Shown: positions 6,601-64,000 of the stretch, in pieces
How the letters are laid out: each line of letters begins with the position of its first letter
How positions within the stretch are numbered: position 1 is the stretch's first letter
Assembly: GCF_000143415.4 (NCBI RefSeq)
Contig: NW_003314354.1
Location: 590,705 to 654,704, forward strand
DNA length: 64,000 nt
DNA from: Selaginella moellendorffii
Lineage: Eukaryota; Plantae; Lycopodiophyta
Direction: 5' to 3'
Translations under genes and position numbers: made by a program
The notes under the pieces: generated by a model
What the model was told of the DNA's origin: nothing
Databases searched by the model: none
The model's input: the letters and a program-made list of their open reading frames with translations, nothing else

Positions 6601-7593
6601 CGCCTTTGGATAGCCACCGTTCCCTGAATGAGAATGTGAGACTAGGTGCGGAGTATGCGCGCATCACAAACCTCGCAAAATTCGCCAGGAAGGAACTCGA
6701 AATAAAAATCTTCAGACAGTTTTTCCCGCCTTTCTCGATGATAGAGGCTGAGGCTCCCATAGATTGGCTCTGCAGCGGACAGGCAGGCGTGAGGCAAATT
6801 TGCAGCTGCGAAAGCGGATCCAACGTACCCACGAAACCTGCTTGAAGCTTGAGTTGTAAGACCTTGACGGCAACCTTGAGACCACTGTCGCAAACAGCAA
6901 AGAAGACAGACAGGTAAGTAGCGTAAATGCAGAGAAACACCACAACCTGCCAAGAGAAGCTGGAGGGGGTTCCGGCAGTCGCTGGCCACTTATAGCGCCT
7001 CTCTCGGATTCCCAGTTGAATGCAGGCTCGTAAGCATGAAGAGGGGAGGGGCCGAGATGCTGCTGCACAAAGAGAGGGGAGGGGGGGATTTATTCCTTCC
7101 ACCACCGAGAAAGTGAGGACTGCACCTTCAGCTTCTTTGTACGCCCGGGAGTATTGGTGGCCTCTTCGCTGTCACACGCGCTTGGGCCCTGGCGCAGGTT
7201 GGAGAGGTGTAACTCTTGCAAGGGAAAGGCGCATCAACAAAAGAGTGTGAGTGCGGGGGAACGAGGCAGTGGGCAGGCAGAGAGCTCTTACCGGTTTCTA
7301 CATCGGTGTCGGGTCCCTCGAAAATCTGATTGTGAAAGGCAGGCCGCGAGACGCTTTGGTAGTGGCCGTACTTGGCGTCATCCGTGAGCCAGGCCGAGCT
7401 GTAGGATTGCAAGACAAGCTTGAGATGGGGGCAGTGCTCCGCATCTGCTTGCAGCTGCTGCAGCCAACACCAGCAATCAACAATAAGCTCCCCAGGATGA
7501 ACAAACCTGTGGATCCAGCTCCAAGGCGCTTGACGGGAACGCCACTCCCCGGCTCATCCTCTTGAACCGCTGCCCGCGACCGGGAGCTGCCAT
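615..7593 (-). CDS. SPK1: SPIKE1 DOCK-family ROP guanine-nucleotide exchange factor (multi-exon)
   Basis: ATG 7593 MAAPGRGQRFKRM..LDP; KYGHY..FHNQIFEGPDTD; C2/DHR1 LYVYPLSVTFSKKRNLFIRVEVRKDD and YYHDEFKMNLP; DHR2 YYRVGFYG, FLFDTPFT, QWKRRT, SPIENAI, LQRILQGSVAVQVNSG; C-terminus ELSHYIPAILSEL* at 615. Confidence 0.95.
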
Positions 7594-7960: not shown

Positions 7961-10900
7961 ATGCCGCCGCTCCTCCTCCTCCTCCTCCTCCTCGCCGCCA
8001 CGCTCCTCCATGTCGGCCTCTCCGACACCGTGGCCTATGATCACAGGGGCCTTATCATCAATGGCCAGCACCGGATGCTCATCTCGGCATCCATCCACTA
8101 CCCTCGCGCAGCTCCTCAGGTATAGCCACCCATCTCCGATTCTCTACGCAACCTCTGAGTTCATCTGCAGATGTGGAGCCAGCTCATCTCCAATGCCAAA
8201 GCCGGTGGAATTGACGTGATCGAAACGTACGTCTTCTGGGACGGGCATCAGCCCACCAGGGACACTGTAAGCTCTTCCCCGGGCGCTTGTACAGACTTGA
8301 TTCTTGCTCCATTCCCTCCAGTACAACTTCGAGGGGCGATTCGACCTGGTTTCGTTTGTCAAGTTGGTCCACGAGGCGGGCCTATATGCCAATCTCCGGA
8401 TTGGGCCTTACGTGTGCGCGGAATGGAACCTCGGGTGAGAATCTCTCTCCTTCGTTGCATGCAACAACATTCCTTGGTTTTCATCAGGGGCTTCCCCGTG
8501 TGGCTCAAGGACGTGCCAGGAATTGAATTCAGAACAAACAACCAGCCGTTCAAGGTATGATTCACGCGCTCGTTGCTCAAGATTGCATCCGCCCCCGGCA
8601 CCAAGTTTGTCAACTCTTCAGGCGGAGATGCAAGCGTTCGTGGAGAAGATCGTGGCGATGATGAAACATGACAAGCTTTTCGCGCCTCAGGGTGGACCAA
8701 TCATACTGGCTCAGGTACTCTTGCATTTCTTGATTGTGGGCAAAGAAAAGCAGCACAGATTGAGAACGAGTATGGCAACATCGACGCGGCATATGGAGCG
8801 GCCGGAAAGGAGTACATGGAGTGGGCCGCAAACATGGCCCAGGGTCTCGGCACGGGTGTGCCCTGGATCATGTGCCAGCAGTCGGACGCACCAGACTACA
8901 TCGTGAGCTTTTGATTATATAACACTTTCATGACACCCTTTCGCTCCTGCAGCTAGACACTTGCAACGGCTTCTACTGCGATGCCTGGGCTCCCAACAAC
9001 AAGAAGAAACCCAAAATGTGGACCGAGAATTGGAGCGGCTGGTGAGCCACGTTTGAGGAAGGTTGAATGCCCCTTGGTTATGTCTTGGATCACCCACAGG
9101 TTCCAGAAATGGGGAGAGGCATCCCCGCACAGGCCCGTGGAAGACGTTGCCTTCGCTGTAGCCCGTTTCTTCCAGCGCGGGGGAAGCTTCCAAAACTACT
9201 ACATGGTTGGGGGTTGGGCTCTTCCTTGCAATGTGCTAAAGCTCGTCTGGAAACCTTGCAGTACTTTGGCGGCACCAATTTCGGGCGATCATCCGGAGGC
9301 CCATACGTTACGACCAGCTACGATTACGACGCACCCATTGATGAGTTTGGTATAAGGGTTGTGTGGCGTAGTATACCATGCTAACGCGGGTAACGTGCAG
9401 GAGTAATTCGCCAGCCCAAATGGGGCCATTTGAAGCAGCTGCACGCTGCAATCAAGCTCTGCGAAGCCGCGCTTGGCTCCAACGATCCCACCTACATTTC
9501 CCTGGGCCAACTGCAAGAGGTAAACACGGGCTTCTAAACCTGGTCTTCACCCTCTTGCAGGCCCATGTCTACGGGAGCACGTCATCCGGAGCTTGTGCAG
9601 CTTTTCTGGCAAACATTGATTCCAGCTCCGATGCCACCGTGAAGTTCAACTCTCGGACGTATCTTCTACCCGCCTGGTCTGTCAGTATTCTCCCCGACTG
9701 CAAAACAGTCAGCCACAACACCGCTAAGGTCTCTCACTCTCTCTCCCTTCTTCTCATGCTGACGATGAAACATTTCTATCCGAAGGTGCACGTTCAAACA
9801 GCCATGCCAACAATGAAGCCCTCCATCACGGGGTTGGCCTGGGAATCCTATCCTGAACCAGTCGGAGTGTGGAGCGACAGTGGTATTGTGGCATCGGCAT
9901 TGCTCGAACAAATCAACACAACCAAGGATACAAGCGACTACCTCTGGTACACCACAAGGTGGATTTTGACTTTTCTCCGGCTACCTGGAGCTTTGCTTAC
10001 ACCCTCTGGGCAGCCTGGATATCTCTCAAGCAGATGCCGCGTCTGGAAAAGCACTTCTTTCTCTTGAAAGCATGAGAGACGTTGTTCATGTCTTTGTCAA
10101 CGGAAAACTAGCAGGTAGCTGGCTTTCTAGATTTCCCGCTCTAAACACTTATATGGCATGATTCAGGCAGCGCAAGCACAAAGGGAACCCAACTGTATGC
10201 CGCTGTGGAACAGCCTATCGAGCTAGCCTCGGGGCACAACTCCCTGGCGATTCTTTGCGCTACGGTTGGCCTACAGGTTGTCTATCTGACCACCGCAAGT
10301 GTGTGCGGCTTTCTTACTTCGCTCCGCAGAACTATGGTCCATTTATCGAGACATGGGGTGCCGGCATCAACGGCTCGGTCATAGTCAAGGGCCTTCCCTC
10401 GGGTCAAATAGATCTCACTGCTGAAGAATGGATACACCAGGTTCGCTCACCACAATGAGCCTTTTGTTATTCTGTGTGGACGCAGGTAGGCCTCAAGGGG
10501 GAAAGCTTGGCCATCTTCACGGAGAGCGGATCTCAGAGAGTGAGGTGGTCGTCGGCAGTTCCTCAAGGGCAGGCATTAGTGTGGTACAAGGTAATCTTCC
10601 AACACCATGGTATCACATGTATCGTGTGGATTGCAATGCAGGCGCACTTTGACAGCCCCAGCGGCAACGATCCGGTGGCTTTGGACTTGGAAAGCATGGG
10701 GAAGGGCCAGGCATGGATCAACGGGCAGAGTATTGGGCGCTTTTGGCCATCCTTGCGTGCACCAGACACTGCCGGATGCCCTCAAACGTGTGACTATCGC
10801 GGCAGCTATTCCTCTTCCAAGTGCAGGAGTGGCTGTGGCCAACCTTCTCAGCGATGGTGAGCTGTGGACCTTGTACAAGATTACCTAACGTCTCTACCTC

Positions 10901-11015
10901 TAGGTACCATGTTCCACGCAGCTGGCTCCAAGACAGCGGAAACTTGGTGGTGTTGTTTGAGGAGGAAGGTGGCAAGCCGTCTGGTGTGTCATTCGTGACC
11001 AGGACGGTGGTTTGA
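7961..11015 (+). CDS. BGAL: Glycoside hydrolase family 35 beta-galactosidase, secreted, no C-terminal lectin domain
   Basis: Leu-rich signal peptide; VAYDHR..IHYPR; [12 protein letters not shown]; catalytic [14 protein letters not shown] and [10 protein letters not shown]; [11 protein letters not shown]; [10 protein letters not shown]; [18 protein letters not shown]; YHVPRSWL; stop TGA at 11013-11015. Confidence 0.96.
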
Positions 11016-11130: not shown

Positions 11131-12950
11131 ATGGCATGTCCAAGAAACGAGCAGCGCCCAAGGGAGATAGCAGCGGGCATTTTCTATGGAGCGCCCCGAG
11201 GAGGCGGTCATCAACAGCCCCCTCGGCTCTTGCACTTGCTACGCGACATCCGCAGCGATCTTGGCCAAGAATCCACACCCATCGCGGCCGGGTTAGTTGA
11301 ATGTTGTGCTTTGGCTGTTCGAGTGAAGAGTGCTTTGGAAGCTGGAACAGGGATGCTTGGGCCACGTTCGCGAGGCAAGAGCAGGCCCTTCAATACGCCG
11401 ACTGTCACCGCCATGGCCTCGCCGTCTTCACGTACCAAGACCACACAACGGGCCAAAGGCGATTCCTTGTTACCTCTCACCTCGAGTTCTGGAGGAGGTG
11501 GGCCTCCTCCCCCGGACCTCATGATTCTAACGCATCGTGCACCGCAGATACGAGAAGATGCACGGCAGCTTGAGGCACCACTATGAAATTATACGCGAGG
11601 TAAGATTGCTGCCCGAGCTGTAGGTGGGCTGGATGCACATTGCTGCGCATGCATAGAATACCCCGTGCAATCTCTACTTCGATCTGGAGTTCAACCGGCA
11701 CACCAACCAGGGCGCGGATGGCGATGCCATGGTCGACCTCCTGCTGCAACTGCTCGCCTCCACGCTCTACGAGGCTTTCTCGATCCGCTACAACGTGGCC
11801 TGGACACTGGAGCTCGACTCGTCAACCGCAGGTAATACTAGTCTTAGCAGACACAAGGATTCCTTCCTATAATGGCTTTATAGACAAGTTCTCTCGGCAC
11901 CTCATCTTGCGCATCCCCAACACCGCCTTCAAGGACAACTCGCATGCAGGGGCGTTTGTTGCGCATGTAGGTGACCCTGTTCTCTTTTCCATGTTGGGAT
12001 AATGTTTTGCTGCAGCTGTGCTCGCGGATACATGTGCTTCGCGGGCGTGACAAGCACCTGGAGGAGCTTTATGTCATCACCGATCATTCTTCCACCTCCA
12101 GGCTGTTTGTCGATCAGGCTGTCTACTCGCGTAACCGTTGCTTCCGCCTCGTCTTCTCTGCCAAGGCTGGAAAGACGGCTATCCTGGTCCCGACGTACAG
12201 ATTCGCCTCCGGCTCCGAAGTGGTCATGGTCAGTCCCCGCTGCTCCTCCCTGGAGGCTTGACTTCATACAAAGCCGTTGCAGGACGATATTACAACGTTC
12301 ATGCAAGCGCTCGTTTGCAACGTGGATGCGAATTGCGAGACACTTCTCACATTTGACCGCGGGGTAGGCCTAGTATATCCTTCACATTTGTTGTTAATTA
12401 TCCGCTGAAGGCTGCTGGCGAACACCCAAAGTCGCTCTCCAATATCCAGCCTCAACAGAGCGTCGCTTCCGAAGCATCGCCATTTGGTGCAGTTGATGCG
12501 TTTGTGGAATCAATTTCATCCTTTGGAAACACTCCGGGTGCGTATATCCTACTCGTGCGTTCCTGTCTGATGCAACGCAGGAAAGATTCGAAACTGGTTT
12601 TGGTTTTCGGAGCTCGGCATTATTGTCTATAATATTTCGGGCAACCGTTTCTGCGAGCGAGTGGGAAGGCAGCACAAGAGCAACAACGGTATGATTGTGT
12701 GTCTTGTTCTTTCTTTTGTTGACGCGTCAACCACTATGCAGTCATGTACATCATCAACTTACGACGAGCAAGCTACTATCAAAAATGTCATGATCCGGAT
12801 TGCAGGGGTAAACGGCTATATAACTAGAGCAAACTTGACGAGTTACTGTGCCCAGGATACAAATCTCCTGTGAGACCTGTTCCATGCCATGTTCTCCCAC
12901 CCGCAGGTTTTCACACACACGACGCAGAGACACAGATATACAGGCGGTGA
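11131..12950 (+). CDS. PRIMPOL: DNA-directed primase/polymerase (AEP superfamily PrimPol)
   Basis: Spliced reading gives [22 protein letters not shown] (DxE), KFSRHL (SxH), [15 protein letters not shown] and the Zn finger [13 protein letters not shown]...QKCHDPDC. Stop at 12948-12950. The true start may lie upstream. Confidence 0.92.
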
Positions 12951-13000
12951 ATGCATCTTTTATCCGTGTCGTCAAAATTACAGCGCCTGCGTTCTGTTGT

Positions 13001-14315
<1,315 letters not shown>

Positions 14316-14809
14316 CTTGTCTTGCTGCTATGGTGGTGTTAATCGACTCACTGGGTGAAGCAAAGAGCCCTACAGCGAAAATGAGCCATAGAAAGAAACG
14401 AAGCACTCCCCCATGAGTGTGTAAGTGGGACGACTCTTGGCTTCAAATTGATTATTGGGAATAAAAAGAAAAGAACCTGCAAGAGTTAGCTGATTTCTCC
14501 CTCATTGTACGTGTTGAACCCAAGCACGCAGGAAACCTGTACATTCGGATCTATTGCCACACACATACCATCAGGAGACACCAAGGTGGAATGGTCGTCC
14601 GTGTCCAGCAGAAGGTGCACCGATCATAAATTGACAACTCCCATTCTTGTTCTCTGCATTAAACCACAATCAATCCCTTTGAAAAACTCAATGCTTACCA
14701 ATTGAGCAGGAGCTCTTTCACTGCTCCAGTGTTATCATGATGATGTAGGCTGTGACCATATATAGGGATGCAAGCTACCACATCCTGCTGTGGCATTCTG
14801 CTGTAGGTC

Positions 14810-15771: not shown

Positions 15772-17886
15772 TTAATAAATTCCGCTCAAAAGCTGCAACG
15801 CAGTGAAAGACCTTTTCATGAAAACATAAACATTAAAGTTACCTCCTTTGTCTTTTGACAACGGGCTTTGATACTATCAATTAGTTGTTGTGTCGTCAAG
15901 TTAGCCTGTAATCACATGTTGTGGTGAAAGACAAAAATGTCAATGCAGCTTACTCGATGGCTGGGATGCACATCAGAGTGGTGACCTGAACAGATATTGA
16001 TTGAGTATGTGATGTCTAATTCCACGTACAAATGCAGATGAAGGCTTACGTAAGTTCATATTGCTTATGTCCCGGATAGGCTCGTCAACCTTTCTACCAG
16101 ACCGCAACTCAAATTCTGCCAATAGAACAGGAGAGGGTGAATGAAAACCTTAAAAATAACATACGAAAACGTGGTGAATGCTTTTTGCAGAACTGTATAT
16201 TTTTCTCCGGGCTCTGACGGGCCTGTAAAATAATATAACTTCAGGCAGATACGATATGGGGCTTACCTTTGGAAAAAAGGATTTCTCAAGAAGTCTTATA
16301 CGGCTCTCCAAAGTACAAAATCTTGCCTGTGATAGTAAATGGAGTTAGTAACAGCAACTGAACTTTTCTATTACCTCTAATGTTTGAGTCGTCTTTGAAA
16401 GGCTTTCTTCCAGGGTGCTGAAGCGAGACCCCAGCTTCTCGGCTATTTCGCCCTGGTAGACGCTTGGTTGAGCACAAAGAAATGCTCGCGTTGATCAAAC
16501 TTACTATTTTCAGCTTGATCTCGTCATAGCAGGAAGTAATGGCTGCAACATTCTTTGAAACCACCGGGGCTGCTTCATCATCTTCCGACGTTGATGGAGA
16601 AATAGAACACTTTCTCGAAGTCATTTCTGAACTCAGGGACTTATGGGTGTCCATCGTTCTTGGAAGAGATGCATCTGGACTTTTCCTTATTCCGCGATCG
16701 AGCTCTCTTGGAAGACTCGAGTCGATACCTCCAATCTAGCATTTTTAGACAAAGTAAATCCTTAATATACCTTAATATTTCGTTTACCTGTGTTGGTGAT
16801 TTGACCTGAAAATCAGCTTCTGCTTGTTTTTCGTTATCAGGTATGTAACACGGGCTCGACCTGTCTTCCATCTGCACATGATGTAAATAGCTTCGCAGTT
16901 TAGACACCTAATTTGTTATTAACCTCGTCGTGGTCGGCCTGTATGCCTGGCTGCTCGAAAGTTAGGCGAGGTGTCGGAGAGAGCTGTCACATGCAGGAGA
17001 TAGGGAGAAACTCTTGAGAGTGAAAACATACCTCGATGGCGAGCTTACACATTTTACTTATAGACGGCAATTTATTCTTGCATCTTGGAGATGAGGTGGT
17101 CTTGATTCTAAGAGACGGACTTTTGCGTTCCTGGAGCCAAAACGTGAATAGGACTGATAAAGTAAAGAAAAGAAAACAGAAACACCTCGTTGACCTCTTC
17201 ATTTCTGGAGATCCTTTTATGCCTCGAGGACATGACAGATTCTGACTAATACAAGAGAATAGTGACAATTGATAATGCATAAGATACCTTTTTAGTTACA
17301 CCTGCCCGTCGGGACTCTTTTAACAACTCATTATGCTTCCTTTTGCAGCACTGCTCATATTCTATTCAAGATAAGCGTCACAAGGAGTTTAACAAACCTG
17401 GACGACATCATGGACAAATATCATCTTTCTTTCTGAGAAACCTTTCGAGAATATCTAGCAGTGAAGAGGTCAGGTGCGTCTTGATGTCCATGTCATTGTT
17501 ACCTGTGCCAGCGTCAAGGAACATCTATATCCAAACTCAGTCCGGAGAAACTTCAAGATGCACTCTATGAATCTCTGTTAGCAAAAATTAGTAGTGTACT
17601 ATCTCTAGCTTTTGCTTGGTCGCACCAGGTCACTTTTCGCGTATAATTCATAGCCATTCGTTGAGAGATACCTGAAAACATGCCTGGAATAACCTAACAG
17701 CGCGTGATGGAGTAGTGGAAGAACAGCCGATGGAAGTCCCATTCTCAGGCTGCAACAAAAGCATGAGACTCCAAATCATCTTGTAATATGACCGTACCCT
17801 TGGTTGTCGATTGCGTGTGGGTAGGAAACAGATCGGAGCTGCGCCTTCAGTCGCTCTAGGTTTCCTTCAACATCTCCTGTTGCCAT
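15772..17886 (-). CDS. CEP44: Centrosomal protein CEP44 homolog (multi-exon)
   Basis: Hand-spliced with GT-AG introns: MATGDVEGNLERLKAQLRSVSYPHAIDNQG/LRMGLPSAVLPLLHHALLGYSRHVFRYLSTNGYELYAKSDL/RFIECILKFLRTEFGYRCSLTLAQ/IFSKGFSERKMIFVHDVVQ/CCKRKHNEL. This matches my recollection of the CEP44 N-terminal domain (MATGD, YP, YS, EL.AK.D.RFI, GF.E.K, KH.EL). Low-complexity middle; last exons LTTQQLIDSIKARCQKTKE/LLSGIY*. Confidence 0.85.
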
Positions 17887-18088
17887 GGCTGCCCTAGGCC
17901 TAGCTCTGTTTGCATTTGCAAAACATCACTGAATCAAGAGCTCAGGCAGCAAGGCTCAAGAAATGTGCCAAGGAACGAATATCCCGCCCATTATCCCCTC
18001 CTCACTCTAAGTCGTCCGGCTTGATATCCAACGGTCTTTAGAAAGGCGGGTCAGTTGGAATCTTTTCCGAAAGCAAAGACTCCTCTAT
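17887..18088. promoter_or_regulatory. Putative bidirectional promoter between the CEP44-like gene and CAPE
   Basis: About 200 bp between two divergent coding starts. Contains AACGGTC at 18030-18036 (GACCGTT on the minus strand, a MYB-type site). Confidence 0.55.
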
Positions 18089-21000
18089 ATGGTAAGTGCC
18101 TCTCTTACGTCAAGAAGCATTCCCTCAGAGTAGTGTGGTAATGGCAGGAGCACAAGAGACCGTCGATTATAAGGATCTCCAAGCCAAGGCACAGTCTATT
18201 GATACAGGAAGAGGTTCTGGCTGCAAAAGTGGATGTGGTGGGGCGTCATGAACTAGAAGGCCTGTGGCAGGAGCTGGATTCCTGGTCTTTCGATATTTTC
18301 AAGGTTGCAACTGAGGACCTGCCGAAGGTCTGTCAATACTGTCCCTTTGCGCCTCAAAAGATTTAACCTTGCGCAGATGGCAGAAAGAATATTTGTAAAC
18401 CTGGGCCTGTTAACGACTTTACCTCTGGACGTCCAGAAATTAAAAGCTTTCATTGAGTGTGTAGGTGTCGAATACTTTTTCTTGTTCTCGATTGGGCGCT
18501 CCTTCCCTTGTTCTCCTCTCTACACAGATGATGGCACAATATCGCGCACATGTTCCATTTCACAACTTCCGGCATGCGTGCGATGTCCTACATGCTATGT
18601 AAGCGCCCAGAAGCTGTCGTACTAAAGTTTTTCTGGTTGATTACCAGGTATTTGTTTCTTAAATTAGGAGGAGCGGATGAGAAGTTTAACGAACTTGAAA
18701 AGCTTGCTCTTTGCATAAGTGCATTGTGTCACGATGTTGATCATCCAGGGCTTACAAACTCTTTTCTTGTTGCTTGTAATGATCCTCTTGCTATTCGATA
18801 CAATGACTTATCTGTATTAGAAAATCATCATGCTTCGATCACGGTGAAGGCACTGACGGTATAAAGCATTTTTTCTCGTAATAAAGATGTGATTTTTCTG
18901 TATAGGGGTACGAGTCCATGAACATTCTAGGAATATTTCCTGACTCAGAACAAAGACACATTCGTAAGCTTATTGTGTCTTGTATTCTTGCGACGGACAT
19001 GGCTTACCATGGCGCTGTTGTTCAGAGCTTCAGTTTAAGAAGCAAGGAAGTAGGCTCATTCCATGCTTCTTCTCGTTATGAGTACCAGCCACCTCCACCG
19101 CCCAAAAAGGTCCCGTGCAAGGTTACAGGGATATTTGAAATGGAGGAGCAACAAGAAGAACCAGCATTGTTGTTTCCTCAAGTGACGAAAGAACACAGGA
19201 GCAGCGACGATGTTCTGCTTCTTATGAAAGTGATTATGAAATGTTCAGATATTAGCAACACTATCAGACCTTATCCACTCTCCAAGAAGTGGGCTGCTTT
19301 GCTGCTTCTAGAATGGTTTAGACAAGGGGACGTAGAAAGGAGGTTAGGAATGGAAATATCAAGAAATATGAACAGGAACGATCCAGACTCTTTACAGTAG
19401 GGACAACCTTTCTTGCGTATTTTGCCAATAAATGACGTTTGCAGCTTCTGACAGGTCGATGACACTTGGCTGCATTGACGCCTTTTCAATACCAATGTAC
19501 GAAGCTGTAGCACGAGTATTACCAAAGCTGAAAAACAATGTTTTACCAAATCTTGCTTCGAATCGGGAGTCCTGGATGTCTTTTTCAACAGCTGGACCGA
19601 TAGAACAGGTTATACTTCTGTTGTGAATTATGCTATCACATCCATTGCCATGCAGGAAGTGCAAGTTATACTTGGTTCCTTTTTTCCCATTGAAGGTGAC
19701 GACGAGCAACAGAGGCAATCGACGTCGAAGTCAGGAGCTAGATCGTCACAGACAGGGCAATCAACGATGCCAGAGTCCGCTCAATCCTCCGAAGGCCACA
19801 GGGTTTCTGAGATTAAAAAGGCTAGCGTGACAACGCACACGAGTCCTGGGAATGAAAGGCCCCTGAGCCTCCTCTTTGGAGCTCCGCTGGGCAGAGACGT
19901 GAATACGTTAGCATCAGAATTGGCGTGGAACACTACTCTACGGGACTCTTCACTGAGAGTCAATTTAGTCCCATCCACAAGAAGGTCTCATTCTTCCGGA
20001 AGCATTGGATCGCTACAGCTAGGTCCTGGACAAACAGTGCCAAGTGAGAGAGGCTCTTCACTTGCTGGTACTATAAATGACGAAATGGACTACAGACATG
20101 AAACATCGTTATCTTTGGATCGTATTGACGTTGACAAAGGACCTGTGGGATTTTTCACAAGGCTTCGTGCGCGTGGCGTAGCCATCAGGGTCAGTCAAGT
20201 GCTGGACAGCAGGGTTTGGGCGCACTTTGTGGCCATTCCTGCTACACTGATTGCGCTCTTCTTAAATGATTTTAGCAGGGCATTTCTACCGAAGTCGTTA
20301 GACACGTTCGTGGATGTGGTTTACGTCATCTGTCTGTTCCTCTTCTTGCTTGACCTTGTTGCACTGTCAGTACTAAAGCCAGCCTATCTTTTCAGCTTCG
20401 CCTTTTGGTAGGTATGTGATTTCTCGTCATAGTTGGACATCGTTTATACTAACATGCCATTGTTAGTAAGGCTCGATCTTGTTGGAAGCCTTACTCTACT
20501 TCCATATATGTTTGATCTCATTAGGCAGAACCTCATTGTTGCTAGAGTCTGGAAAGCAGCAGAATCTCTAAGTCGCCTTGCAAAAAAGCTTCAAAACCGG
20601 AGCGCGAAGGTTCCAAGCGCTTTCCTGATTGCTCGGCTAGCAAAGGTATGCATAGATTGGCTGACACTAACAGACGTTTGTAATCCGTCTGTATAGGCTG
20701 TATTTTACCACTGCATTCGCCCTTTAGAGTCCAAGGCCAGAGACGATAAAGAGACGACCGAAGATTCTTCAAATCAGTTTATGTCTTCGAAGCCTAGTTA
20801 TCTATGGTTGAGACTATCAGATTTGCAATCTCAGAGGCTTGTTCTTGGCATCCTCATCTTAGCCATAGCATTACCATATTTTTACCAGCTCCCTGATGAC
20901 CTCGCTCCCACGCTGGCTCTCGCTGCACTTGACTCCAGTCCCCTGTACACACTGAGGTTTAACACCAGCCTTATAAATTTGAACCAGTTCAACAACCAGC

Positions 21001-22729
21001 ATGACTACGCAATTATCTACTTGGGATGTAGAGATGGATGTGCCCAAGGCTATTGCAGCGGGTACGAGTTTTCTGAAGGCGATCCTTTTATTCAAGTGGT
21101 TCCGCCCATTGAAGCAGGTCGTGATGCAAAGTCGGATGTGACATCTAAGTATCGAGATGAAGAACTTATCAAGGTTAAGAGTGACTCTAGACGCTGCGAG
21201 GCATTTTATTCGATTCGTAAACGAAGCCGGAAAAACCACGTACTAAACGTAAGTACTGGTTTCTTGTTCGTATCCAGTAGCTTGAAACATTGGGTGGAGC
21301 AGATGGGGCTGACGTTGCTTATTTTGTGCATCTTGTCTGCTTTATCGTTCCTTTTAAGCTGGGATACCAACAATTTATTGGTTCAGGTGCGTCTTAAGCT
21401 CACTCCGATCTGTTATTCACAGGAGCATTTCAGCCCATTGAAAGAATGGTAAACTTTATCAAGGAGCTTGCAGACAACCCAGGTGCATTCGTGGGGAAGT
21501 CTATTTCCCGAAAGTCCAGGGGAAAATCAGGAAAGGTCGTATGCTAATTAGAGGTTCCTGGCTAATAGATTTCAATGACAGGTCATGGAGACGAGAATGC
21601 TTGAGGGAGCCTTGGTGAAGATCGCAAGCCTGAGCAAAGTGGCTCTTGGGGATGCTGGAATGGACATTCTTTCCGTCAACCTTAAGGGAGCCGAATTTAA
21701 TCGTGAGTTGGCCCTTTCTATACCTTGATCATTTGTCATCCTTCTGTGCACAGCCATGGTTCCAGGTAAGAAGATACGTGCCTGTTTTGGCTTTTGTGAC
21801 ATCAGGAACTTCACTGACGCGACTGAGTGCCTGCAAGAAGATGTTATGATGTTTGTGAATAAAATAGCAGATGTAGTACATAGCAAGGCTATTATGCACA
21901 ATGGGTTTCCAAACAAGAATGTGGGCGATGCCTTTCTAGTCGTATGGAAAAAGACCATGTCTGACGGTGCACAAAAGGTGGAATGTCCTCTTTCTGCTCT
22001 TTCCTGTCAGGAATGTATTTTCTGGTTTCCAGTCAAAAGGTTCTTCGTTTGCGGACAGGGCACTCATATCATTTCTGGATGTCATTCAAGCTTTAGAATT
22101 GTCTGAAGTATTGCACGAATATGCGATGCATCCGGCCATCCAGCAGCGGATGCCAGGTACGTCTCATAATGGTCCTTCCTTGCAGTAAAGATAAGTGGAA
22201 TCATTATTTTCACCTAGGATACACAATCAAGATGGGTTTTGGCCTTCATGTTGGGTGGGCCATCGAAGGAGCCATCGGCTCATCGCACAAAGTGGACCCG
22301 TCGTATTTGTCTCCCCATGTCAACATGGCATCTAGGCTGGAAGCGGCAACCAAGCAATATGGAGTAATGATCTTGATATCAGAAACAGTGATTGCAAACC
22401 TTACAAAGAGTAGCCTTCGCGATTGCTGCCGGAAGCTGGACAGGGTGACCGTCAAGGGCAGTGCGGATCCCTTGACTCTGTACACGTATGACTTGCCAAT
22501 GTTTCAAAACGACCTTAAGGCCCTGTATGCGGATTACAAGAACATGTTTGAGGCAGCTGTGGACAGCTACATTGTTGGCAACTGGCACACTGCTCTGGAG
22601 AAGCTGAGAGAGTGTGTTAACCTGTGGCACTCGGACAGGCCGGCAAGACTGCTCACTTCATTCATGGGGTCACACAAGAACATGGTCCCGGCAAATTGGA
22701 AAGGCTACCGAGAGTTATTGGAGAAGTGA
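18089..22729 (+). CDS. CAPE: CAPE: N-terminal class I cyclic-nucleotide phosphodiesterase, membrane domain, C-terminal class III adenylyl cyclase
   Basis: PDE: DSWSFDIF, FHNFRHACDV, CHDVDHPGLTN, LENHH, LATDM, KCSDISN, EWFRQGD. AC: FGFCDIRNFT, KNVGDAF, GFGLHVGWAIEGAIGSSHKVDPSYLSPHVNMASRLE, VTVKG. Stop at 22727-22729. Start uncertain: ATG 18089 is followed by a GTAAGT donor spliced to 18148. Confidence 0.93.
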
Positions 22730-23492: not shown

Positions 23493-24399
23493 TTTTTCTC
23501 CAACAATGGCAGAAAGAAATTTATAGATACTTGAGCTAGAACGTAATCAGTGTAAAAGTGGAATTCTCTCCCTACTTGAGTAGTTTAAATAAACAGTAAG
23601 CTTATTTTCATTAATAAAAAGAAAAAAGACATCAAAAATACTTTTGAGAACCATGTGTTTCCTTTTGGATTAACCATTAGGTTACAGCTGTATGAAAAGC
23701 TTTTCTCTTAGAGCGCATGTTTGCAATGATTAAGCTACATCAAGAGCATTTAACTTCATGAATTTGGGGAATTGCTGTGTTAATCACAGATTTAATGCCT
23801 TTTATAAAAATTAATATTAGCATAGAAAAAGTTTTATTTAGGGTTTATCTTTATCCTCCAAACAGTCTCAAAGAAATTAAAATAAAAAGATCGAAGATCT
23901 TTTATTAAAGGTTGAGATTGACATCTTTTAGGAGTGCTTTGATTAATTGATAAATAAAAGCTTTATTTTTCTTAATAAATTTATAAGATTTAGAAATATT
24001 TACAAAGGATTGTTGTTGTTTTATGGCTATGACATTATTTAGTATTATTACCATAGTAACTATTGAATTAGTTTTAATCCAGACCACTCACTCCTGTATA
24101 TAAGCTAGGGTTTTTGGGCTAATCAAATACACTTCTATATTCCATGCACCCATACTGATGGAGATGAGAAGCAATTTTGGTTCTCTTTGAGAAGTGCTTA
24201 AATTTATGTGTTTGGTTTAGTTTTTGCATTGTTTCGATCTCTCTTATTCTTGTAGCTTTTCCATTTCTTTCCATTTCCATTTCGGATAAACATTTTTAAT
24301 CTAATATAATTTTTATCAAACTCATTGCTACTAAAAATGTAATGTTATAATCTATAATTTTATGTTATTCTTTGAGCTAATACCTAATATTTTATTTTC

Positions 24400-25620
24400 T
24401 TTGAAATCTTCATATAACAGGGATATTATTAAGAAACAGATTTGATATTTATATATGTATGAGATAGCTTATACCATAATAGATACCATGTTATATATGA
24501 GACATGAATGCATAATTTTATTATAAAGCATACTACAGGTTTGTCTTAAAGCTTTACATGAGCTTTATCTTTTATTTCAATATTGTATTTTATCAATCCA
24601 TACATAATCATAAAGAAAATACCCTGTTAGTTCAAATGGTAAATTAAGTATTTTAGAAAAAAATGTTAATGGTTTCAAAATAGAGTAAAATTATATATCA
24701 CATTTGTAAGAAAAATACAACTGAGTTGGTAAATATAGAAAATTATTTTATTAAATATTTATATTAGATATTTTATTAAAAAAATATAAAACATGTGTAA
24801 AACCTTTCTAACCAGAATATAAGTTACCAATAGATCAAGAGTATGTAACACTTTTTGTAACTTATAATATATAAGATAACTACTATGAAAGTTAAATGAT
24901 GAAGCGATAAAATATTAGAGAAAGAAAACTTAGAATAAGAAGAAAGAAATTTTATAAAAATCAAATTTTAAAATATTAAAAAGACCGGTCTATATGAACT
25001 TCTTATGAAAACTGATTTAGGTTAAAAATTAGTAGAACAACTCCAAAATTAAATATCTAGATTGTAGGCAATAAAGCTGAAAATTATAAACTATGGTTCA
25101 TTAGGATTATAATTAGGTAATATCATGCTAGAAGTTATGATATCAAAATCTCTAAGTTTGAAATTTTGAAAATTTTTCTACAAGATTGTCTCTTGCTGAA
25201 GAATTTTAAATCATATATAGCTAAAAATCTAGAAACATTTAATTTAAATATAAAATAACTATTAGATTATTAAAAAATACTTACTATTCAGAAATTATCT
25301 AAAGGAGAACATTATTATTGAAAACTTTGATTATAAGAAATGTTAATAATTTTATTATAAACTTAGATCTAGCACATTACTATTTATGTAATATTTTTTT
25401 ATTTTTTTTCATGATAGTATATTTAAAATAATTTAGCAACATCATCAAAATATAGTAAAATTTAAGGTTAGTTTTATTTAAATTTATTTTAAAATAATAT
25501 GTATTGTTTTATTAATATTATCAATTGTGAATAAATTGTTGTTATTGATTTTTATCCTCTCTAATTCTTCATTCTCTAAATTAGATTGTTAATATTTTTA
25601 TTATAAAGAACATTAAAATA
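24400..25620 (-). mobile_element. AT-eroded dispersed repeat, probable LINE reverse-transcriptase relic
   Basis: 24850-25620 aligns by eye with 63085-63830. Minus strand keeps PK...SYRPVFL (in the other copy IYPK*...S*KPVFL), like the LINE LIPK...WRPISL motif. Confidence 0.45.
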
Positions 25621-27174
25621 AATAGATAAACTTATAATTAACATATATAACATATATATTATAACCTATAAAAAATATTTCTTTAAATGAATTTTTTTAA
25701 TAAACTTACAATTCACATATATATAGATTTAATTTATATTAATTCTGAGTTTGATATGTTTTGAGGATTTTATAAGTTAGAATAATTTTCTTAAGTCTTC
25801 ATAAGTAGGGTTTTCTGGCAAAATAATGTTATTTTTGAGATATTCTTAAGAATTGCATGTTTGGAATATATACATCACCAGAGATTTTTCTAAATAGCAA
25901 AAAACAAATTTACTTTTCGATATAAATAGTAATATTGTTTTCATAAGATTAGCAACCTTCCTTGTTCTTTCTTGCTTCAAATACCGAATCTATTATATGG
26001 TTTTTCTTTAACGTCCTTCTTTAGGCCAACTATCAATGTCTTTTTTTTTCAATATTCAAAATTCATTATTCTGTAATGGCTTACTACAAGGTCTCATCTT
26101 CTCTCATTTGCAATAATGTGTTAGCTTAGACTATTGAAATAGGAGATTGTGACCCTAGGAGACCATTATTTTCATGAACATACGATATTAGTTTTTGTAG
26201 CAGTGGATTGTAACACATTTGTTAAGGACCATTTGATAATAAGATTGAAATGGTGACCTTTGTGGCCTGAACTTATGTTTCTATGCTCCCTGCCACCACA
26301 AGCCATTCTAAGGAAGCTCCTGAATCTAGTGTCAGGCAATGTAACTGATGTTAGATCTTTTCCTCTTGCAAGGATATGTGTCTGTCTAGGTATTCACAAA
26401 GGTGATGATTCCAATTCTATTCTTCTTCCACATTTTGTCTTGGGTGATTCATTTATCTGATTTCATTATTTGAGAGTGAAGTGGCAAGAGACTGACATCT
26501 TTATGAAATATCTAATTGTATCATTCCGACCTTGTAAGCATTGTTTTGTAGTCAAGCAAAGCCACAAAGCCTACAACAGGCAGTACAATGTACTACTATT
26601 TAACTATTTATTAGAGCAAGAAAATATCGTACTACACCTTATAGTTTCTCATTCCCTAGACATTCCTCAGATGCTGCTCGTAGAATTCCAGAAGTTGTAA
26701 CTTGACTACCATAAAACATGAAAGAAGAAGTGAAAAAGTACCATTCATGTTTTAAAGGTTTTCTTCCATTATTGAAAGATATCCAGAAAAAGTTAACACT
26801 TCAGAGCCTCACATGCACCTCATAAATTTCCCTTAAAGAGATGATGTGCAGTTCTATGGTTCTTTAAGAATACCTGCCAGTTTGAATCTGTCTTGAACAT
26901 GTCTTCGTTAGGTCCATTGGAGCAAAGGGTAAACATAAATGCAGAGTTTTCATAAATAGCATTTCCTTCCAAAATACAGAAGCGACTGGGATGAATTAGA
27001 ATAGTGGAGGCATGAGAATACAAAGGGTATCATCTTGTATGAGGTACAATTCAGTAGAATACGTTTTTCTTTTTTAAATTACAGAAGTTTTGAAACTTTT
27101 ACAGAATAGTCTGGATGTGGCCTAAAGAAGAAAGATTGTATGAAGGAAAGTTTGTATGGAATTGTAAATGTTTA

Positions 27175-30615: not shown

Positions 30616-33600
30616 AGATAGGACATCTGTTACATTGGTGACATGAATCCTAGAGAATTTCTTTGTACACAATGTTTTTCATATAGACATTATGGTTCTG
30701 GAGCACACCTTGTCCTTCACATTGTTCAATAGACATTGTAATTTGTTTCTTTGATGTTCCCCTTGAAAGTGCAACATAAAGTTGACCATGGCCAAAAACA
30801 GGTCTTGGCAAGTAGATACCCACATTCTGTAATGTTTGTCCCTGAGATTTGCAAATTGTTATGGAGAACACAAGCCTTATTGGGAATTGTCATCGTTTGA
30901 GGATAAATGGCATGTCTCCTTCAGTTGGTTTTAAAGAGATTCTTGGTAGAAGGACTTTTTTTCCTTGCATACCATTATGTAGAATTTCAGCTTCTATAAC
31001 ATTTGGTAGTGCCTTGGTTATAATTAGTTTAGTGCCATTACAGAGGCCTTTTTTAGTGTCAATGTTGCGTAACAACATTACAATACATCCGATTTTTATC
31101 TGTAGCTTGTGTGGAGGCATTCCAGATGGTGTTACTGAGTTTAAAAATTCTACAGGATAGTCCAACATCTCTTCTTCTGAATCTGTTTCTACAATGTCAA
31201 TGCTTCTGTATGTTATTGTTCTGCCGGTCATTCTCAAAAGAACTTGGTCGTTCATTTGTAGAGAGAGATCATTTAAAGTTGTGAGAATAGCTTTCTGCGA
31301 TAGGTTTGGGTCATTTGATTGTATATGCTTTCCAAACACATTATCTATCATTTGTTCTCTGGATGTCGATGTTAGAGGTAATTTTATAACTTCTTGGTTG
31401 AATCCTTGGAGGCTAGGTAGGTTACCATTTCCAAGCTTCACAAGCCATCTAGACCATTCTTTTTCTTCAGAGTTCACCCTCATGTTTGTATGTAATGAGA
31501 ACTTTACAAGTTTCCACCATATTGGTGAGGATTTCACGCTGTTTTGGATAATTTGTGCTTTTTAGAACAGGTAATGTCTGTCTGAAATCTCCTCCTGTTA
31601 CTAATGTGATGCCACCAAATTCTGTATCACAGTTTTTTATATCACACAAGACCCTCTCGACAGCTTTAAAAGCGTGAACGGGTACCATGCTTATTTCATC
31701 CCATATGAGCAGGTCAGCTCTTCATATGACCTCGGCAGGTGCTGAATTCTCTCGCAGGTCCGAGGTGCATGTTTCTGTGATTGGTACTGGAAGCTTAAAT
31801 GTTGAATGAGCCATTTGGCCTCCTACAAGAAGAGTACTCGCTATTTCTGTCCACGTGACTGCTAAGACTTTCATGCCATAAGCAGTGACATATTTTATCA
31901 GCGTGTTAAAAAGGTACGATTTCTCTGTGCCTCCTACACCATCAACAAAGAATAATCTGCTTGTTTCTTTTCTGTTTTATATTGCATTCAAGACGTTGTT
32001 AAATATGTGAAGCTGTTCCATGTTCAATCTGGTTTTTAGTAATTCAGCTTCGTCAAGTGTGCATGGCACACAGCTTGTTTCAGTTGTTGTTTCGTTATCT
32101 CCTATAAACTCTGGATCTGGTAACTCGTAGTCAGACAGTTTCTTGCCATGTTCCTGGAGTAATATTGACATTTCATGCAATCCATGTTGCATTGCTGCTT
32201 CATAGTTGTTGTGATTTCGGACAAGGTCTTCACACATGCCTTCCTTGAATTTATCCCATAGTTTTTTGGGATCAATGAGCTTGCAAAATAAACACATGAC
32301 GCTGAATAGATACCTTACTTTTGCAGGCATTTGAAATGTCAACGACTCTTCTAAACATTTCTCCCACTCACAATCATCCTGCAGAAGTCCCATTTCTTGT
32401 GCATTAGAATGGTATGTGTCATATGCAACACCGTTTAATACCTTTAAATCACTAAAACTTGTAGCACCTTTTTTGTAGAGCAGGATCATACGTAGGTAGA
32501 AACGTTCAGAGTCATGCGGTGATACAATGTACATTCTACCGACCACCTTGAATGCACGTTGGCGTGGTGTCCACATTCTGTTTCTTGAATTCCATGTATA
32601 CCACTCAGGAATCTCGTGGTACAAGAGTGTCCTTGCAAATTCATCAATCTTGTTTAGCTCAAACCATTCTGTCAGTTTGGTTTTACGGCCTCTTTGTAAT
32701 GCAATCTCTTCCTCACCATCATTGAAATAAATATTTTGAAGGTTTTCCAGGTGGATGTCCAGTCTCTCAATAGAATGTGATCTCCCATGTAAGTCATATC
32801 CATAGATCCTCCATATTCCTTCTGATGCGGAGACATGCGGCAGTTTCTGAAAGCCTCTATTTTGTCCCAGTCTAGTACTTATATTTGAATATATACTTGA
32901 CACTTTTTACAGTGGAACACACCTCGACATTTATGTGTGCTCTGTATTTACGTAAGAGGTACTTGTTGTATGGCACAACAAACCTGTTGTCAATGGGTTT
33001 GTTCTTTATTAGGACTGTATGTCCTTCTTGGCGCCTTCTATACTCTGGAAACTGACCACCGACATTCTGTGTTTCTTCACAGTAATCTCTTGGATAGTGT
33101 GACTTACATTCACCATCCTTCGTGCATGGGCTGTTTGGAAATTCAGGCCCACAAGGGCCAAGTATCATGTGCTTTTTAAATAATTCATATAATTCTGGGT
33201 CTAGTCTGGCATCTGGTATTTCGGCAGTAACTATATTGTCTATGTCATCGATAGTTCTGATTTTATTATCTTTACCAAGGATCTGGCAGTCCTCTTTTTT
33301 GGAATTCAATCACATAGACATAAGCATTGACCTGGCCAAATATTTCTCGTTTGTAAATGTCATCTATGAGTTCTTGTTTCTTGATGTGTGCAACCAAGTC
33401 AGGTCTGTCTGCAGTTGTTTGTCCAGGTAAAAGGTTTTCAGTGATCTCTTTCCATTTAGGATTGCAGGTGAATGTTATGAACAAATCAGGTTTTCCATAC
33501 TTCCTTACAAGGCTCATGGCATCCTGGTAGTTCTGATTCATCTGTCGTGGGCCTCCAGTGAATGAGGATGGAAGTATTATTAGTTTTCCAGCACGTACCC

Positions 33601-34630
33601 CTTGCTGTTCGGCTCTGTTTTTCACGAAATCTGAGAGGCCACCGTATGCTTCAGCACGTAGCTCACGTTGGTGGTTTCTTATCCATGTTAGTCGGCCACC
33701 TTCAATCTTGGTGTATATATCGACCATGTATTGTTGTGTGAGTTTTCCTGCTGTCAACACAGGGTTGAAATATATGCTTCTTATGCCATTGTGACATATG
33801 CCCCGTATAGCAAATTTGTGCTGATAAAATTCCATCATTGTGACATTACAACGTTTAAGTGCATTGCCATTATCTGTGTATTTTATATCATTTGACCATC
33901 CGTCCTCTCCACTGGGAAAAAGAATTGGGTAGATCATAGGGTCACAACATGATGAAATGATTGATATTTCCTGCATTGATTCTTCCTTTGGATAGACTGC
34001 TATACTACGGTCAAATGGTGGGTTCCCACTTGGATTTGTAAAAATGGCAGCAATTTCATTTGAACACAGTGCATTGCATCTTTGAGGATCTGTTGTGCTC
34101 TCTCCCTTGATGTACATGACAATCTCTTGTGATGAAAGAGACATCTCATTCTCAAGTTCGTGCAACATCTTGAATGCTTTTGCATAGGGATTGATTTCTC
34201 ATAAGAGAACATCTAATCTGTACATTAGTTCCCGGTCGCATTTTTTGTTATGCATATTTCTCATTCTTGTTTCTGTTGCTTGTGCCGTATCTAGAATATA
34301 GAGTTGTGAATACATTGCTTCTTGATCATCTCGTGGTCTGAAGCTGCCCATTCGGTGATACACTTGACCGTGTATCTTAAAGTAGTATGTTCCACCACCT
34401 GAAAATTCTTCGATGTTTGTTCCCATGGAAGCAAATGCTAGAGCACTATTATAGTTCCTTATTAGTTCTTTGAAATTTCCCTGGTTTGAAGTACCTTCTA
34501 GCAACCTCTGGATCAATTCAGGGAAATGGTTTCTATTTTTTATTTGGACACGACCGTGATGACAGCATTGTGATTTTGTTTCTGCATTAAAATGGAAAGC
34601 TCTGCAATGGACACATTGTTTGTCAAATTT
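30588..34630 (-). mobile_element. Helitron with decayed Rep/PIF1-helicase gene
   Basis: Zn finger CVHC..CCHHG; Rep motifs ILPSSFTGGPR, PDLFITFTCNPKW, VIEFQKRGLP, RAHINVEVC; helicase GGDFRQTLPV, LLRNID..GLCNGT, KSQGQT, VFGHGQLYVALSR; stop at 30650. Multiple frameshifts. Confidence 0.95.
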
Positions 34631-47958: not shown

Positions 47959-48761
47959 TGTGAGACACAAAATCCCTAGGCCCCAAAGTGGAGCCGGAAG
48001 GGCGCCACATGGTAGTGGCCGAAGCGAGAGCCAAACGAGCGTAACACGTTTGGACCAAAAGCTCCGACTTGAAAAGTCAAGAGCGGGAGTGGAACTCCCA
48101 ACGAAGTGCTCGAGGAACGAGCACGAAGCGGGCAAAAGGCGAGGCTCCAAAAAGGGACCCAAAAGGACCAACACATGACACATGGGAGTGTCCGAGATGG
48201 ACTCGAGTTGGAGTCCGAAGTGGAGTCCGAGATGGACCAGAGTTGGAGTCCGAAGTGGAGTCCGAGATGGACCCGAGTTGGAGTCCGAAGTGGAGTCCGA
48301 GATGGACCCGAGTTGGAGTCCGAAGTGGAGTCCGAGATGGACCCGAGATGGAGTCCGAGATGGAGTCCGAAGTGGAGTCCGAGGTGGACCCGAGATGGAC
48401 CCAAGTTGGAGTTCGAAGTGGAGTCCGAGATGGACCCGAGATGGAGTCCGAGATGGAGTCCGAAGTGGAGTCTGAGGTGGACCCGAGATGGACCCGAGTT
48501 GGAGTCCGAAGTGGAGTCCGAGATGGACCTGAGATGGAGTCCGAGATGGAGTCTGAGATGGAGTCCGAGGTGGACCCGAGATGGACCCGAAATGGAGTCC
48601 GAGATGGAGTCCGAGATGGACCCGAGATGGACCCGAGATGGAGTCCGAGATGGAGTCCGAGATGGAGTCCGAGATGGAGTCCGAGATGGAGTCCAAGATG
48701 GAGTCCGAGATCGAGTCCGAAGTTGAGACCGAGACCGGGACCGAGACCGAGACCGAGACCA

Positions 48762-48794
<33 letters not shown>

Positions 48795-51759: not shown

Positions 51760-51791
<32 letters not shown>

Positions 51792-56591: not shown

Positions 56592-56647
<56 letters not shown>

Positions 56648-63830: not shown

Positions 63831-64000
63831 ATGAATATATTTTATATATGTTTTTGACATTAAATTTTATAACAGTATCCAAACTATAAAAAATAAAAAG
63901 AAAACTATAAAAAAGAACACCTGTAGAAACATGGGAGTTTATATGGGACCTATAAAAAACAGAGATATAAGAGCCATCCTAAAAAGTATTTTCCTCCTAA

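What the first reader, a model, noticed from the sequence alone, without database searches (positions are those of the whole stretch)
15772..22729. Head-to-head CEP44-like / CAPE pair: candidate sperm-flagellum module on one ~200-bp promoter
Seen: a CEP44-like gene starts at 17886 (-) and CAPE coding starts at or before 18089 (+), leaving about 200 bp for both promoters and 5' UTRs. Known: CEP44 is a centriole/basal-body protein. CAPE is the PDE-AC fusion of streptophytes with motile sperm and is linked to sperm function in Marchantia. Land plants build basal bodies only in spermatogenous cells. Inference: a basal-body structural gene and a flagellar cAMP enzyme are co-transcribed from a bidirectional spermatogenesis promoter. 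I know of no description of this linkage. Caveat: intergenic spaces are short throughout this region, so chance adjacency is possible.
Basis: partly seen in the sequence, partly recalled or inferred. Interest (0 to 1): 0.85.

Follow-up and report, generated by a model that had tools for sequence, protein, structure and literature searches.

The report
Selaginella CEP44 and CAPE, head-to-head neighbours
In the spikemoss Selaginella moellendorffii a centriole gene (CEP44) and the sperm cAMP enzyme gene CAPE really do start 202 bases apart on opposite strands, but the pairing is missing from the five other plants checked and shared control is not shown, so it is a tidy lead, not a proven sperm module.

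Summary
The window is Selaginella moellendorffii scaffold GL377658.1. A CEP44-domain gene runs on the minus strand from ATG 17886. The CAPE orthologue (PDE, membrane segments, class III cyclase) runs on the plus strand from ATG 18089. The start codons are 202 bp apart, and an in-frame stop lies upstream of each.

SmCAPE has been known since 2016. Its public gene model is wrong; a revised 16-exon model of about 1,280 aa is colinear with Marchantia CAPE.

One RNA assembly holds a contig that runs from the CEP44 exon-1 boundary, across the whole spacer, into the CAPE exon-1/exon-2 splice. So the spacer is transcribed, and the two 5' ends probably meet or overlap.

Both genes are almost silent in two deep RNA runs. 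CEP44 is detected more widely than CAPE in the one study that has either.

CEP44 is not within 10 kb of CAPE in Marchantia, Riccia, Physcomitrium, Ceratopteris or Cryptomeria. No other lycophyte could be reached. Spacers of 100-240 bp are normal in this neighbourhood.

Best reading: a lineage-specific adjacency in a compact genome. Co-regulation is plausible but unproven.

The scan noted this same pair before on another piece of this genome, and several other clusters of cilium genes. That hints at genome-wide clustering, which was not tested here.

The parts
15772..17886 (-). SmCEP44 gene, from start codon to the stop of the public model. Exons resolved here: 17886-17798, 17749-17626, 17574-17503, 17454-17398, 17350-17300, 17245-17186, 17130-17032, 16983-16924, 16871-16806, 16735-16505, 16452-16375, 16326-16267. 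The 3' exons between 16266 and 15772 are not resolved.
   Evidence: PF15007 hit on exon 2. Public 417-aa model with PF15007. Frame-preserving GT-AG chain. RNA support for junctions 17398/17350 and 16505/16452. The 3' end stayed ambiguous, with 2456 possible chains.
17887..18088 (.). 202-bp spacer between the two start codons, 49% G+C. It is covered end to end by one RNA contig.
   Evidence: X5 record 5 covers 17798-18092.
18030..18036 (-). One match to the DUO1 consensus RRCSGTT (GACCGTT on the minus strand), 53 bp from the CAPE ATG. A lead only.
   Evidence: it is the only match in 15-23 kb, and 15% of shuffled spacers have at least one. The consensus is taken from PMC6290024.
18089..22729 (+). 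SmCAPE gene, revised to 16 exons: 18089-18091, 18148-18327, 18377-18460, 18528-18598, 18648-18858, 18906-19396, 19455-19608, 19656-20407, 20471-20645, 20697-21248, 21303-21386, 21434-21535 (or -21538), 21582-21702, 21754-21977, 22033-22156, 22218-22729. The product is about 1,279-1,280 aa.
   Evidence: Splice-chain search. Colinear alignment with six CAPE proteins. RNA joints 18091->18148 and 20645->20697.
18377..19608 (+). Class I PDE domain, with HNFRH, HDVDHPG and ATDM motifs.
   Evidence: PDEase_I hits of 92 and 94 bits; alignment.
20150..21386 (+). Hydrophobic membrane region between the two enzyme domains.
   Evidence: Conserved hydrophobic blocks in the alignment. The Chara orthologue carries Pfam Ion_trans.
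21582..22729 (+). Class III adenylyl cyclase catalytic domain and C-terminal tail, nearly invariant among CAPE proteins.
   Evidence: Guanylate_cyc hit; long invariant runs in alignment A1 and.

Best explanation
These are the Selaginella moellendorffii orthologues of the centriole-lumen protein CEP44 and of CAPE, the PDE/adenylyl-cyclase enzyme that Marchantia sperm need for motility. They lie head to head with 202 bp between their start codons.

The spacer is not an empty shared promoter. It is transcribed throughout, and the two 5' UTRs most likely meet or overlap by a few tens of bases. Each core promoter would then sit inside the other gene's leader.

The adjacency is most likely a lineage-specific product of this compact genome, where spacers of 100-240 bp are usual. 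It is not an ancestral or necessary part of CAPE or CEP44 regulation.

Both genes probably belong to the sperm-making programme (inferred from family knowledge). They may therefore be switched on together and may share nearby cis elements. If so, that follows from their shared programme and tight packing, not from an evolved two-gene module.

Shown here: gene identities, geometry, the transcribed spacer, and lack of the pairing in five other plants. Inferred: overlapping transcription starts, sperm-specific expression in Selaginella, and any shared element.
For: Identity.

Geometry.

Transcribed spacer: X5 record 5 runs 17798-18092 and continues into exon 2 of CAPE. Its left end sits exactly at the CEP44 exon-1 donor.

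Low expression in general RNA: X18 and X19 each laid 2 reads out of 9.2 million records read. In some searches, 15 other presumed RNA assemblies of the species hold next to none of the sampled words.

No CEP44 near CAPE elsewhere: Marchantia, Riccia (49), Physcomitrium (53), Ceratopteris (56), Cryptomeria (57), and a tblastn of the CEP44 model against those loci found nothing.

Short spacers all around the locus.

Rough chance estimate (my inference, assuming 150-300 cilium genes among about 22,000): one to four adjacent pairs of cilium genes are expected genome-wide by chance.
Against: For this particular gene, the chance that either immediate neighbour of CAPE is a cilium gene is only about 1-3% under the same assumptions.

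Both genes were co-detected at similar low depth in run X5.

The only DUO1-type site in the 8-kb locus lies in the spacer.

Other notes of this scan report further clusters of cilium genes in this genome, which argues against pure chance.

No lycophyte relative could be examined, so conservation within lycophytes is unknown. The overlap of the two 5' ends rests on one low-depth contig from a run that also holds retained introns, so DNA or pre-mRNA could have bridged the gap.
Confidence: 0.55

Rival explanations
1. An evolved two-gene sperm module. One bidirectional, spermatogenesis-specific promoter in the 202-bp spacer, perhaps read by a DUO1-type MYB factor, drives both genes together, and selection keeps them adjacent in lycophytes.
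For: Geometry. Both gene families are tied to sperm: MpCAPE is expressed as antheridia mature and is needed for sperm motility and male fertility (PMC11032487), and CEP44 is a centriole protein (PMC7021698). Both genes are near-silent in most RNA data and were co-detected in X5. A single RRCSGTT site lies in the spacer. MpDUO1 is required for flagella formation (PMC6290024).
Against: No CEP44 lies beside CAPE in five other plants. No RRCSGTT site occurs in the 1 kb upstream of CAPE in the four orthologous loci with DNA. The motif is expected by chance in 15% of such spacers. Word shares suggest that three of the four runs of study P2 hold CEP44 but little or no CAPE. The spacer looks like overlapping leaders, not one promoter.
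Confidence: 0.22
2. One instance of a wider habit of this genome. Sperm-motility genes of Selaginella are physically clustered, and are silenced and opened together as chromatin neighbourhoods. The short spacer itself matters little.
For: Notes of this scan, mostly unchecked, list three or four further clusters of cilium and centriole genes on other pieces of the same genome. One was followed up and judged real and unusual, but also absent from other plants. Runs of three or four such genes would be very improbable by chance (my estimate: fewer than 0.1 expected).
Against: Nothing else in this window belongs to the cilium set. The neighbours are a frame-shifted alpha-tubulin pseudogene, a primase-like gene, a beta-galactosidase, a DOCK gene, a Helitron and repeats. 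Some of the noted clusters may be the two haplotypes of one locus. No genome-wide test was possible with these tools.
Confidence: 0.18
3. The close spacing is an annotation artefact. One or both genes really start further away, through unrecognised upstream exons, so the 202 bp is not the true distance.
For: The public CAPE model is wrong internally, so models at this locus are fallible. One X19 read pair links 17826-17975 with 18150-18349, which could mean a longer transcript.
Against: Both ATGs are preceded by in-frame stops. The N-termini match their orthologues: MATGD... has the form expected of CEP44 (from memory), and the short CAPE N-termini of moss, hornwort and conifer align with this one. 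The RNA splice 18091->18148 uses the predicted first exon. Longer leaders would bring the genes closer or make them overlap, not separate them.
Confidence: 0.05

Closest known systems
CAPE (COMBINED AC with PDE) of Marchantia polymorpha and other streptophytes with motile sperm (PMC5159850, PMC8115329, PMC11032487)
   Same: Same architecture and order: N-terminal class I PDE, hydrophobic middle, C-terminal class III cyclase. It is 45-47% identical overall and nearly invariant in the cyclase domain. The Selaginella orthologue was already listed in the 2016 paper.
   Different: It is shorter than the liverwort proteins because it lacks their N-terminal extension and long linker inserts. Nothing is known here about its activity or expression. 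In Marchantia the upstream neighbours are small unannotated genes and a peptidase, not CEP44.
CEP44, centriole lumen protein of animals (PMC7021698)
   Same: The N-terminal CEP44 domain (PF15007) is present, and a predicted helical C-terminal part is arranged in a similar way.
   Different: The middle and C-terminal parts are not alignable by the tools used. Its role in plant basal-body formation is untested. No paper in the library links CEP44 to land plants.
Bidirectional (head-to-head) gene pairs of plants, TSSs under 1 kb apart (e.g. PMC4222868, PMC4035068)
   Same: Opposite strands, start codons 202 bp apart, in a genome with short spacers.
   Different: Start sites are not mapped and correlated expression is not shown. 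The arrangement is not conserved outside Selaginella, and the leaders probably overlap instead of flanking a shared untranscribed promoter.

Membership tests
CAPE | N-terminal class I cyclic-nucleotide phosphodiesterase domain with the metal-binding His/Asp motifs | tested here: met
   PDEase_I at 92 and 94 bits on two exons. HNFRH, HDVDHPG and ATDM align with MpCAPE in the revised model.
CAPE | C-terminal class III adenylyl cyclase catalytic domain on the same polypeptide | tested here: met
   Guanylate_cyc at 27.1 bits against a cut-off of 21.9. One open 16-exon chain joins both domains. The cyclase region is almost invariant among seven CAPE sequences.
CAPE | Orthology: the closest relatives are CAPE proteins of motile-sperm streptophytes | tested here: met
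   Best hits are MpCAPE (E 7.5e-273), Riccia and Physcomitrium. The profile search also finds Anthoceros, Cycas, Cryptomeria and Chara CAPE.
CAPE | Both enzyme activities; expression in male gametangia or sperm | not testable with these tools
   No assay was possible. RNA data show only very low or patchy expression in samples of unknown tissue.
CEP44 | N-terminal CEP44 domain (PF15007) | tested here: met
   Exon 2 alone scores 41.8 bits against a cut-off of 27, covering profile positions 30-67 of 126. The public 417-aa product carries PF15007. Atlas feature hits of 0.92 and 0.90 fall in CEP44 clusters.
CEP44 | Localisation in the centriole or basal-body lumen | not testable with these tools
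   Inference from the animal protein only (PMC7021698).
Bidirectional promoter pair | Two genes on opposite strands, 5' ends facing, less than 1 kb apart | tested here: met
   ATG 17886 (-) and ATG 18089 (+), 202 bp apart.
Bidirectional promoter pair | Mapped divergent transcription start sites within the shared region | tested here: inconclusive
   One low-depth contig covers the whole spacer and joins both mRNAs. No read-start pile-ups were found (table 6).
Bidirectional promoter pair | Correlated expression of the two genes | tested here: inconclusive
   Both genes are near-silent in X18 and X19, and both are present in X5. Word shares suggest that X7, X9 and X10 hold CEP44 but little or no CAPE.
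Conserved gene module | The same adjacency in other lineages that have both genes | tested here: not met
   No CEP44 within 10 kb of CAPE in Marchantia, Riccia, Physcomitrium or Ceratopteris, by annotation and by tblastn, nor in Cryptomeria by annotation alone because no DNA was returned there.

The most novel reading that the evidence does not exclude
The CEP44-CAPE pair is one visible piece of a genome-wide arrangement in Selaginella moellendorffii, in which unrelated sperm-motility and basal-body genes have been gathered into tight clusters and divergent pairs. In that reading, the whole once-per-life-cycle programme is opened through a few compact regulatory regions, here a 202-bp spacer with a DUO1-type site. 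This would be a plant counterpart of the testis-specific gene neighbourhoods of animals.
Probability: 0.2. Interest if true: 0.7.

Novelty: new member of a known kind. Interest (0 to 1): 0.33.

Why it matters
If the 202-bp spacer does drive both genes in spermatogenous cells, it would be one of the smallest candidate sperm-specific regulatory regions in a land plant. It would be easy to test as a dual reporter in Marchantia or Physcomitrium antheridia, where the CAPE reporter so far needed 7.8-11 kb of upstream DNA (PMC5159850, PMC11032487).

The pair is also one data point for whether motile-sperm genes are clustered in Selaginella.

As it stands the finding is modest. Both genes are already known families, the pairing is not ancestral, and close divergent neighbours are common in this genome.

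A practical by-product: the public model of SmCAPE lacks the catalytic HD motif of the PDE domain. The corrected model restores it.

Tried and rejected
1. A flagellar three-gene cluster with the tubulin-like gene at 12.7-14.4 kb. Rejected: it is an alpha-tubulin copy broken by several frame shifts, not a delta or epsilon tubulin.

2. My first guess for CAPE intron 1 (18092-18207). Rejected by the RNA contig and the public model; the intron is 18092-18147.

3. Using Logan contigs L006-L008 as an independent species. Rejected: they are Marchantia accessions, 97-100% identical to MpCAPE.

4. Run X6, labelled as another organism, as a test of synteny in a relative. Rejected: its four contigs are identical to the window and cover only CAPE pieces, so they say nothing about a relative.

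5. Searching for CAPE exon-sized fragments from other Selaginella species. Blank.

6. Approaching synteny from the CEP44 side.

7. Resolving the CEP44 3' exons by exhaustive GT-AG search. 2456 chains fit the public length, so they are left unresolved.

8. The two raw RNA runs as evidence for start sites. Each gave one read pair, one unspliced over an intron and one linking CEP44 exon 1 to CAPE exon 2. That is too little, and it is compatible with DNA carry-over.

9. DUO1-site enrichment upstream of CAPE orthologues. None in the 1 kb upstream in four loci.

Full report
WHAT THE WINDOW IS. The PDE exon at 18918-19400 found a 100% identical public protein, SELMODRAFT_427736 of Selaginella moellendorffii. 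The locus fetched for it, GCA_000143415.2 scaffold GL377658.1, is identical to window 8089-32729 over 24,641 bases.

THE OBSERVATION.
- Minus strand: an ATG at 17886 opens a gene whose second exon alone matches Pfam CEP44 (PF15007) at 41.8 bits against a cut-off of 27. The public 417-aa model at the same place (window 15772-17886) carries PF15007. A feature search places the exon in CEP44 clusters.
- Plus strand: an ATG at 18089-18091 is followed at once by a GTAAGT donor. Downstream exons match PDEase_I (92 and 94 bits) and Guanylate_cyc.
- Spacer: the start codons are 202 bp apart. An in-frame stop lies upstream of each (18008 for CAPE, 17928 for CEP44), with no in-frame ATG between either stop and its start codon.

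GENE MODELS.
- CAPE: I chained exons by requiring GT-AG introns of 35-400 bp and an open frame. I then corrected intron 1 from RNA. The model has 16 exons and about 1,280 aa. It is colinear from end to end with CAPE of Marchantia, Riccia, Physcomitrium, Anthoceros and Cryptomeria.
- Public CAPE model: at 1,167 aa it skips the exons with HNFRH and HDVDHPG and reads one membrane segment in a wrong frame.
- Conservation: the cyclase domain is almost invariant across the family.
- CEP44: twelve exons from 17886 to 16267 are resolved. Two junctions are confirmed by RNA. The last exons are not resolved.

WHAT IS ALREADY KNOWN.
- CAPE was described in Marchantia in 2016, and the Selaginella orthologue was listed then (PMC5159850).
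- Its distribution follows motile sperm (PMC8115329).
- MpCAPE expression rises as antheridia mature. It is not needed to build sperm, but it is needed for their motility and for male fertility (PMC11032487).
- CEP44 is a centriole-lumen protein in animals (PMC7021698).
- No paper in the library holds both CEP44 and Marchantia, and none came up that links CEP44 to land plants.
- That land plants form basal bodies only in spermatogenous cells is textbook knowledge and was not tested here.

RNA EVIDENCE (one read-laying run of 6,000 letters).
- Two raw RNA runs of the species (X18, X19; about 9.2 million records read from each) laid two reads each. Both genes are practically silent there.
- Fifteen other presumed RNA assemblies of the species hold next to none of the locus's words.
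- Only one study (P2: X5, X7, X9, X10) holds part of it.
- In X5, short contigs at k-mer depth 3-7 cover CEP44 exons, with spliced junctions 16505/16452 and 17398/17350 and also some retained introns. They also cover two stretches of CAPE (20568-20769, spliced as in my model, and 20801-20951).
- The key piece is a 307-base contig. It begins exactly at the CEP44 exon-1 donor (17798), runs through exon 1 and the entire spacer to 18092, and continues with 12 bases of CAPE exon 2 (splice 18091->18148).
- Its left end looks like CEP44 mRNA and its right end is CAPE mRNA. An assembler can only join them if reads overlap by about 30 bases. So the simplest reading is that the two leaders meet or overlap inside the spacer. 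This is an inference. The run also holds unspliced RNA, so pre-mRNA or DNA could have bridged the gap.
- Word shares argue that X7, X9 and X10 hold CEP44 but little or no CAPE. They hold 0.16-0.18 of the words in 15772-19400 but only 0.09-0.10 in 16000-21900, about what CEP44 alone would give.
- Expression is therefore compatible with co-regulation, but does not show it.

MICROSYNTENY. Public annotation with 10-kb flanks was read around CAPE:
- Marchantia polymorpha: upstream lie small genes and a peptidase S9 gene.
- Riccia fluitans: no gene within 10 kb.
- Physcomitrium patens: a GH116 gene 7 kb upstream.
- Ceratopteris richardii: none.
- Cryptomeria japonica: none.
A tblastn of my CEP44 model against the four loci with DNA found nothing, while it recovered the Selaginella gene. 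Three further contigs turned out to be Marchantia accessions. No other lycophyte was reachable. The pairing is thus not ancestral to land plants. Whether it is kept within lycophytes is open.

IS IT MORE THAN CHANCE?
- The spacing is ordinary. Neighbouring intergenic spaces here are 116, 238, 1603 and 202 bp.
- Assume 150-300 cilium-related genes among about 22,000. This is my assumption. Banks et al., as cited in bioRxiv 10.1101/2021.07.25.453666, give a lower bound of 32 flagellar groups among 137 lost in angiosperms.
- On that assumption, the chance that either immediate neighbour of CAPE is such a gene is about 1-3%. Yet one to four adjacent pairs are expected somewhere in the genome. A scan that reads the whole genome would find them.
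- Against pure chance: other notes of this scan list the same pair on another piece of the assembly (probably the second haplotype) and three or four further clusters of cilium and centriole genes. One of these was followed up and judged real, but also absent from other plants. These notes are leads and are not tested here.

THE SPACER.
- It holds one match to the DUO1 consensus RRCSGTT of PMC6290024, at 18030-18036 on the minus strand.
- This is the only match in 15-23 kb, but 15% of shuffled spacers have one. The 1 kb upstream of CAPE has none in Marchantia, Riccia, Physcomitrium or Ceratopteris.
- By eye, pyrimidine-rich patches lie on each strand (about 17975-18005 on plus, about 18037-18051 on minus), and an ATATAG sits on the minus strand at the CAPE ATG. 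These would fit crossed start sites near 18005-18055. This is an impression, not a result.

VERDICT. The pair is real and both genes are correctly named. The reading as one bidirectional sperm promoter is possible but not shown. The most likely account is a lineage-specific adjacency in a compact genome, with two tightly packed and probably overlapping transcription units. It is a new instance of a known kind of arrangement between two known gene families. Interest is modest. It would rise if lycophyte synteny, stage-resolved expression or a genome-wide clustering test came out positive.

Noticed in passing
window 18089-22729: The public model of SmCAPE (SELMODRAFT_427736, 1,167 aa) omits the exons that carry the PDE catalytic motifs HNFRH and HDVDHPG, and reads one membrane segment out of frame. 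A 16-exon model of about 1,280 aa is colinear with all other CAPE proteins.
   Followed up: yes
window 12754-14406 (-): An alpha-tubulin-like sequence, G+C-rich, is broken by several frame shifts. The public annotation calls a 251-aa gene here with only weak tubulin hits. It looks like a pseudogene, not a sperm-specific tubulin.
   Followed up: partly
window 20150-21386: The CAPE middle region has conserved hydrophobic blocks, and the Chara orthologue carries Pfam Ion_trans (PF00520). This fits the separate note of this scan (s1-423096) that the linker is an ion-channel-type membrane domain.
   Followed up: partly
window 17963: An A>G difference was seen in an RNA contig (X5) and in one raw read (X19). 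It removes the only ATG on the plus strand inside the spacer, so one allele lacks an upstream ATG in the presumed CAPE leader.
   Followed up: no
window 30890-34168 (-): A Helitron: Helitron_like_N (E 1.8e-54) and the Pif1 2B helicase domain in adjacent reading frames.
   Followed up: no
window 48190-48806, 51282-51814, 56079-56648; inverted 42688-42925: Arrays of a 12-base minisatellite (GTCCGAGATGGA, 45-53 copies) recur three times within a G-skewed repeated block, with a short inverted copy upstream.
   Followed up: no
window 24000-26000, 58000-61000, 63000-64000: Blocks of 19-25% G+C lie next to gene-bearing DNA of 43-59% G+C.
   Followed up: no
window 903-7105 (-), 9378-11015 (+), 11131-12950 (+): The neighbours upstream are a DOCK-family gene (DHR-2 lobes A and B), a beta-galactosidase (GH35) and a gene with a Herpes_UL52 primase-type domain. 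The last two are only 116 bp apart in the public annotation.
   Followed up: no
run X6 laid on window 18652-21025: A run labelled as a different organism holds four contigs identical to this locus, including intron sequence. It contains DNA of this species or of a very close strain.
   Followed up: no
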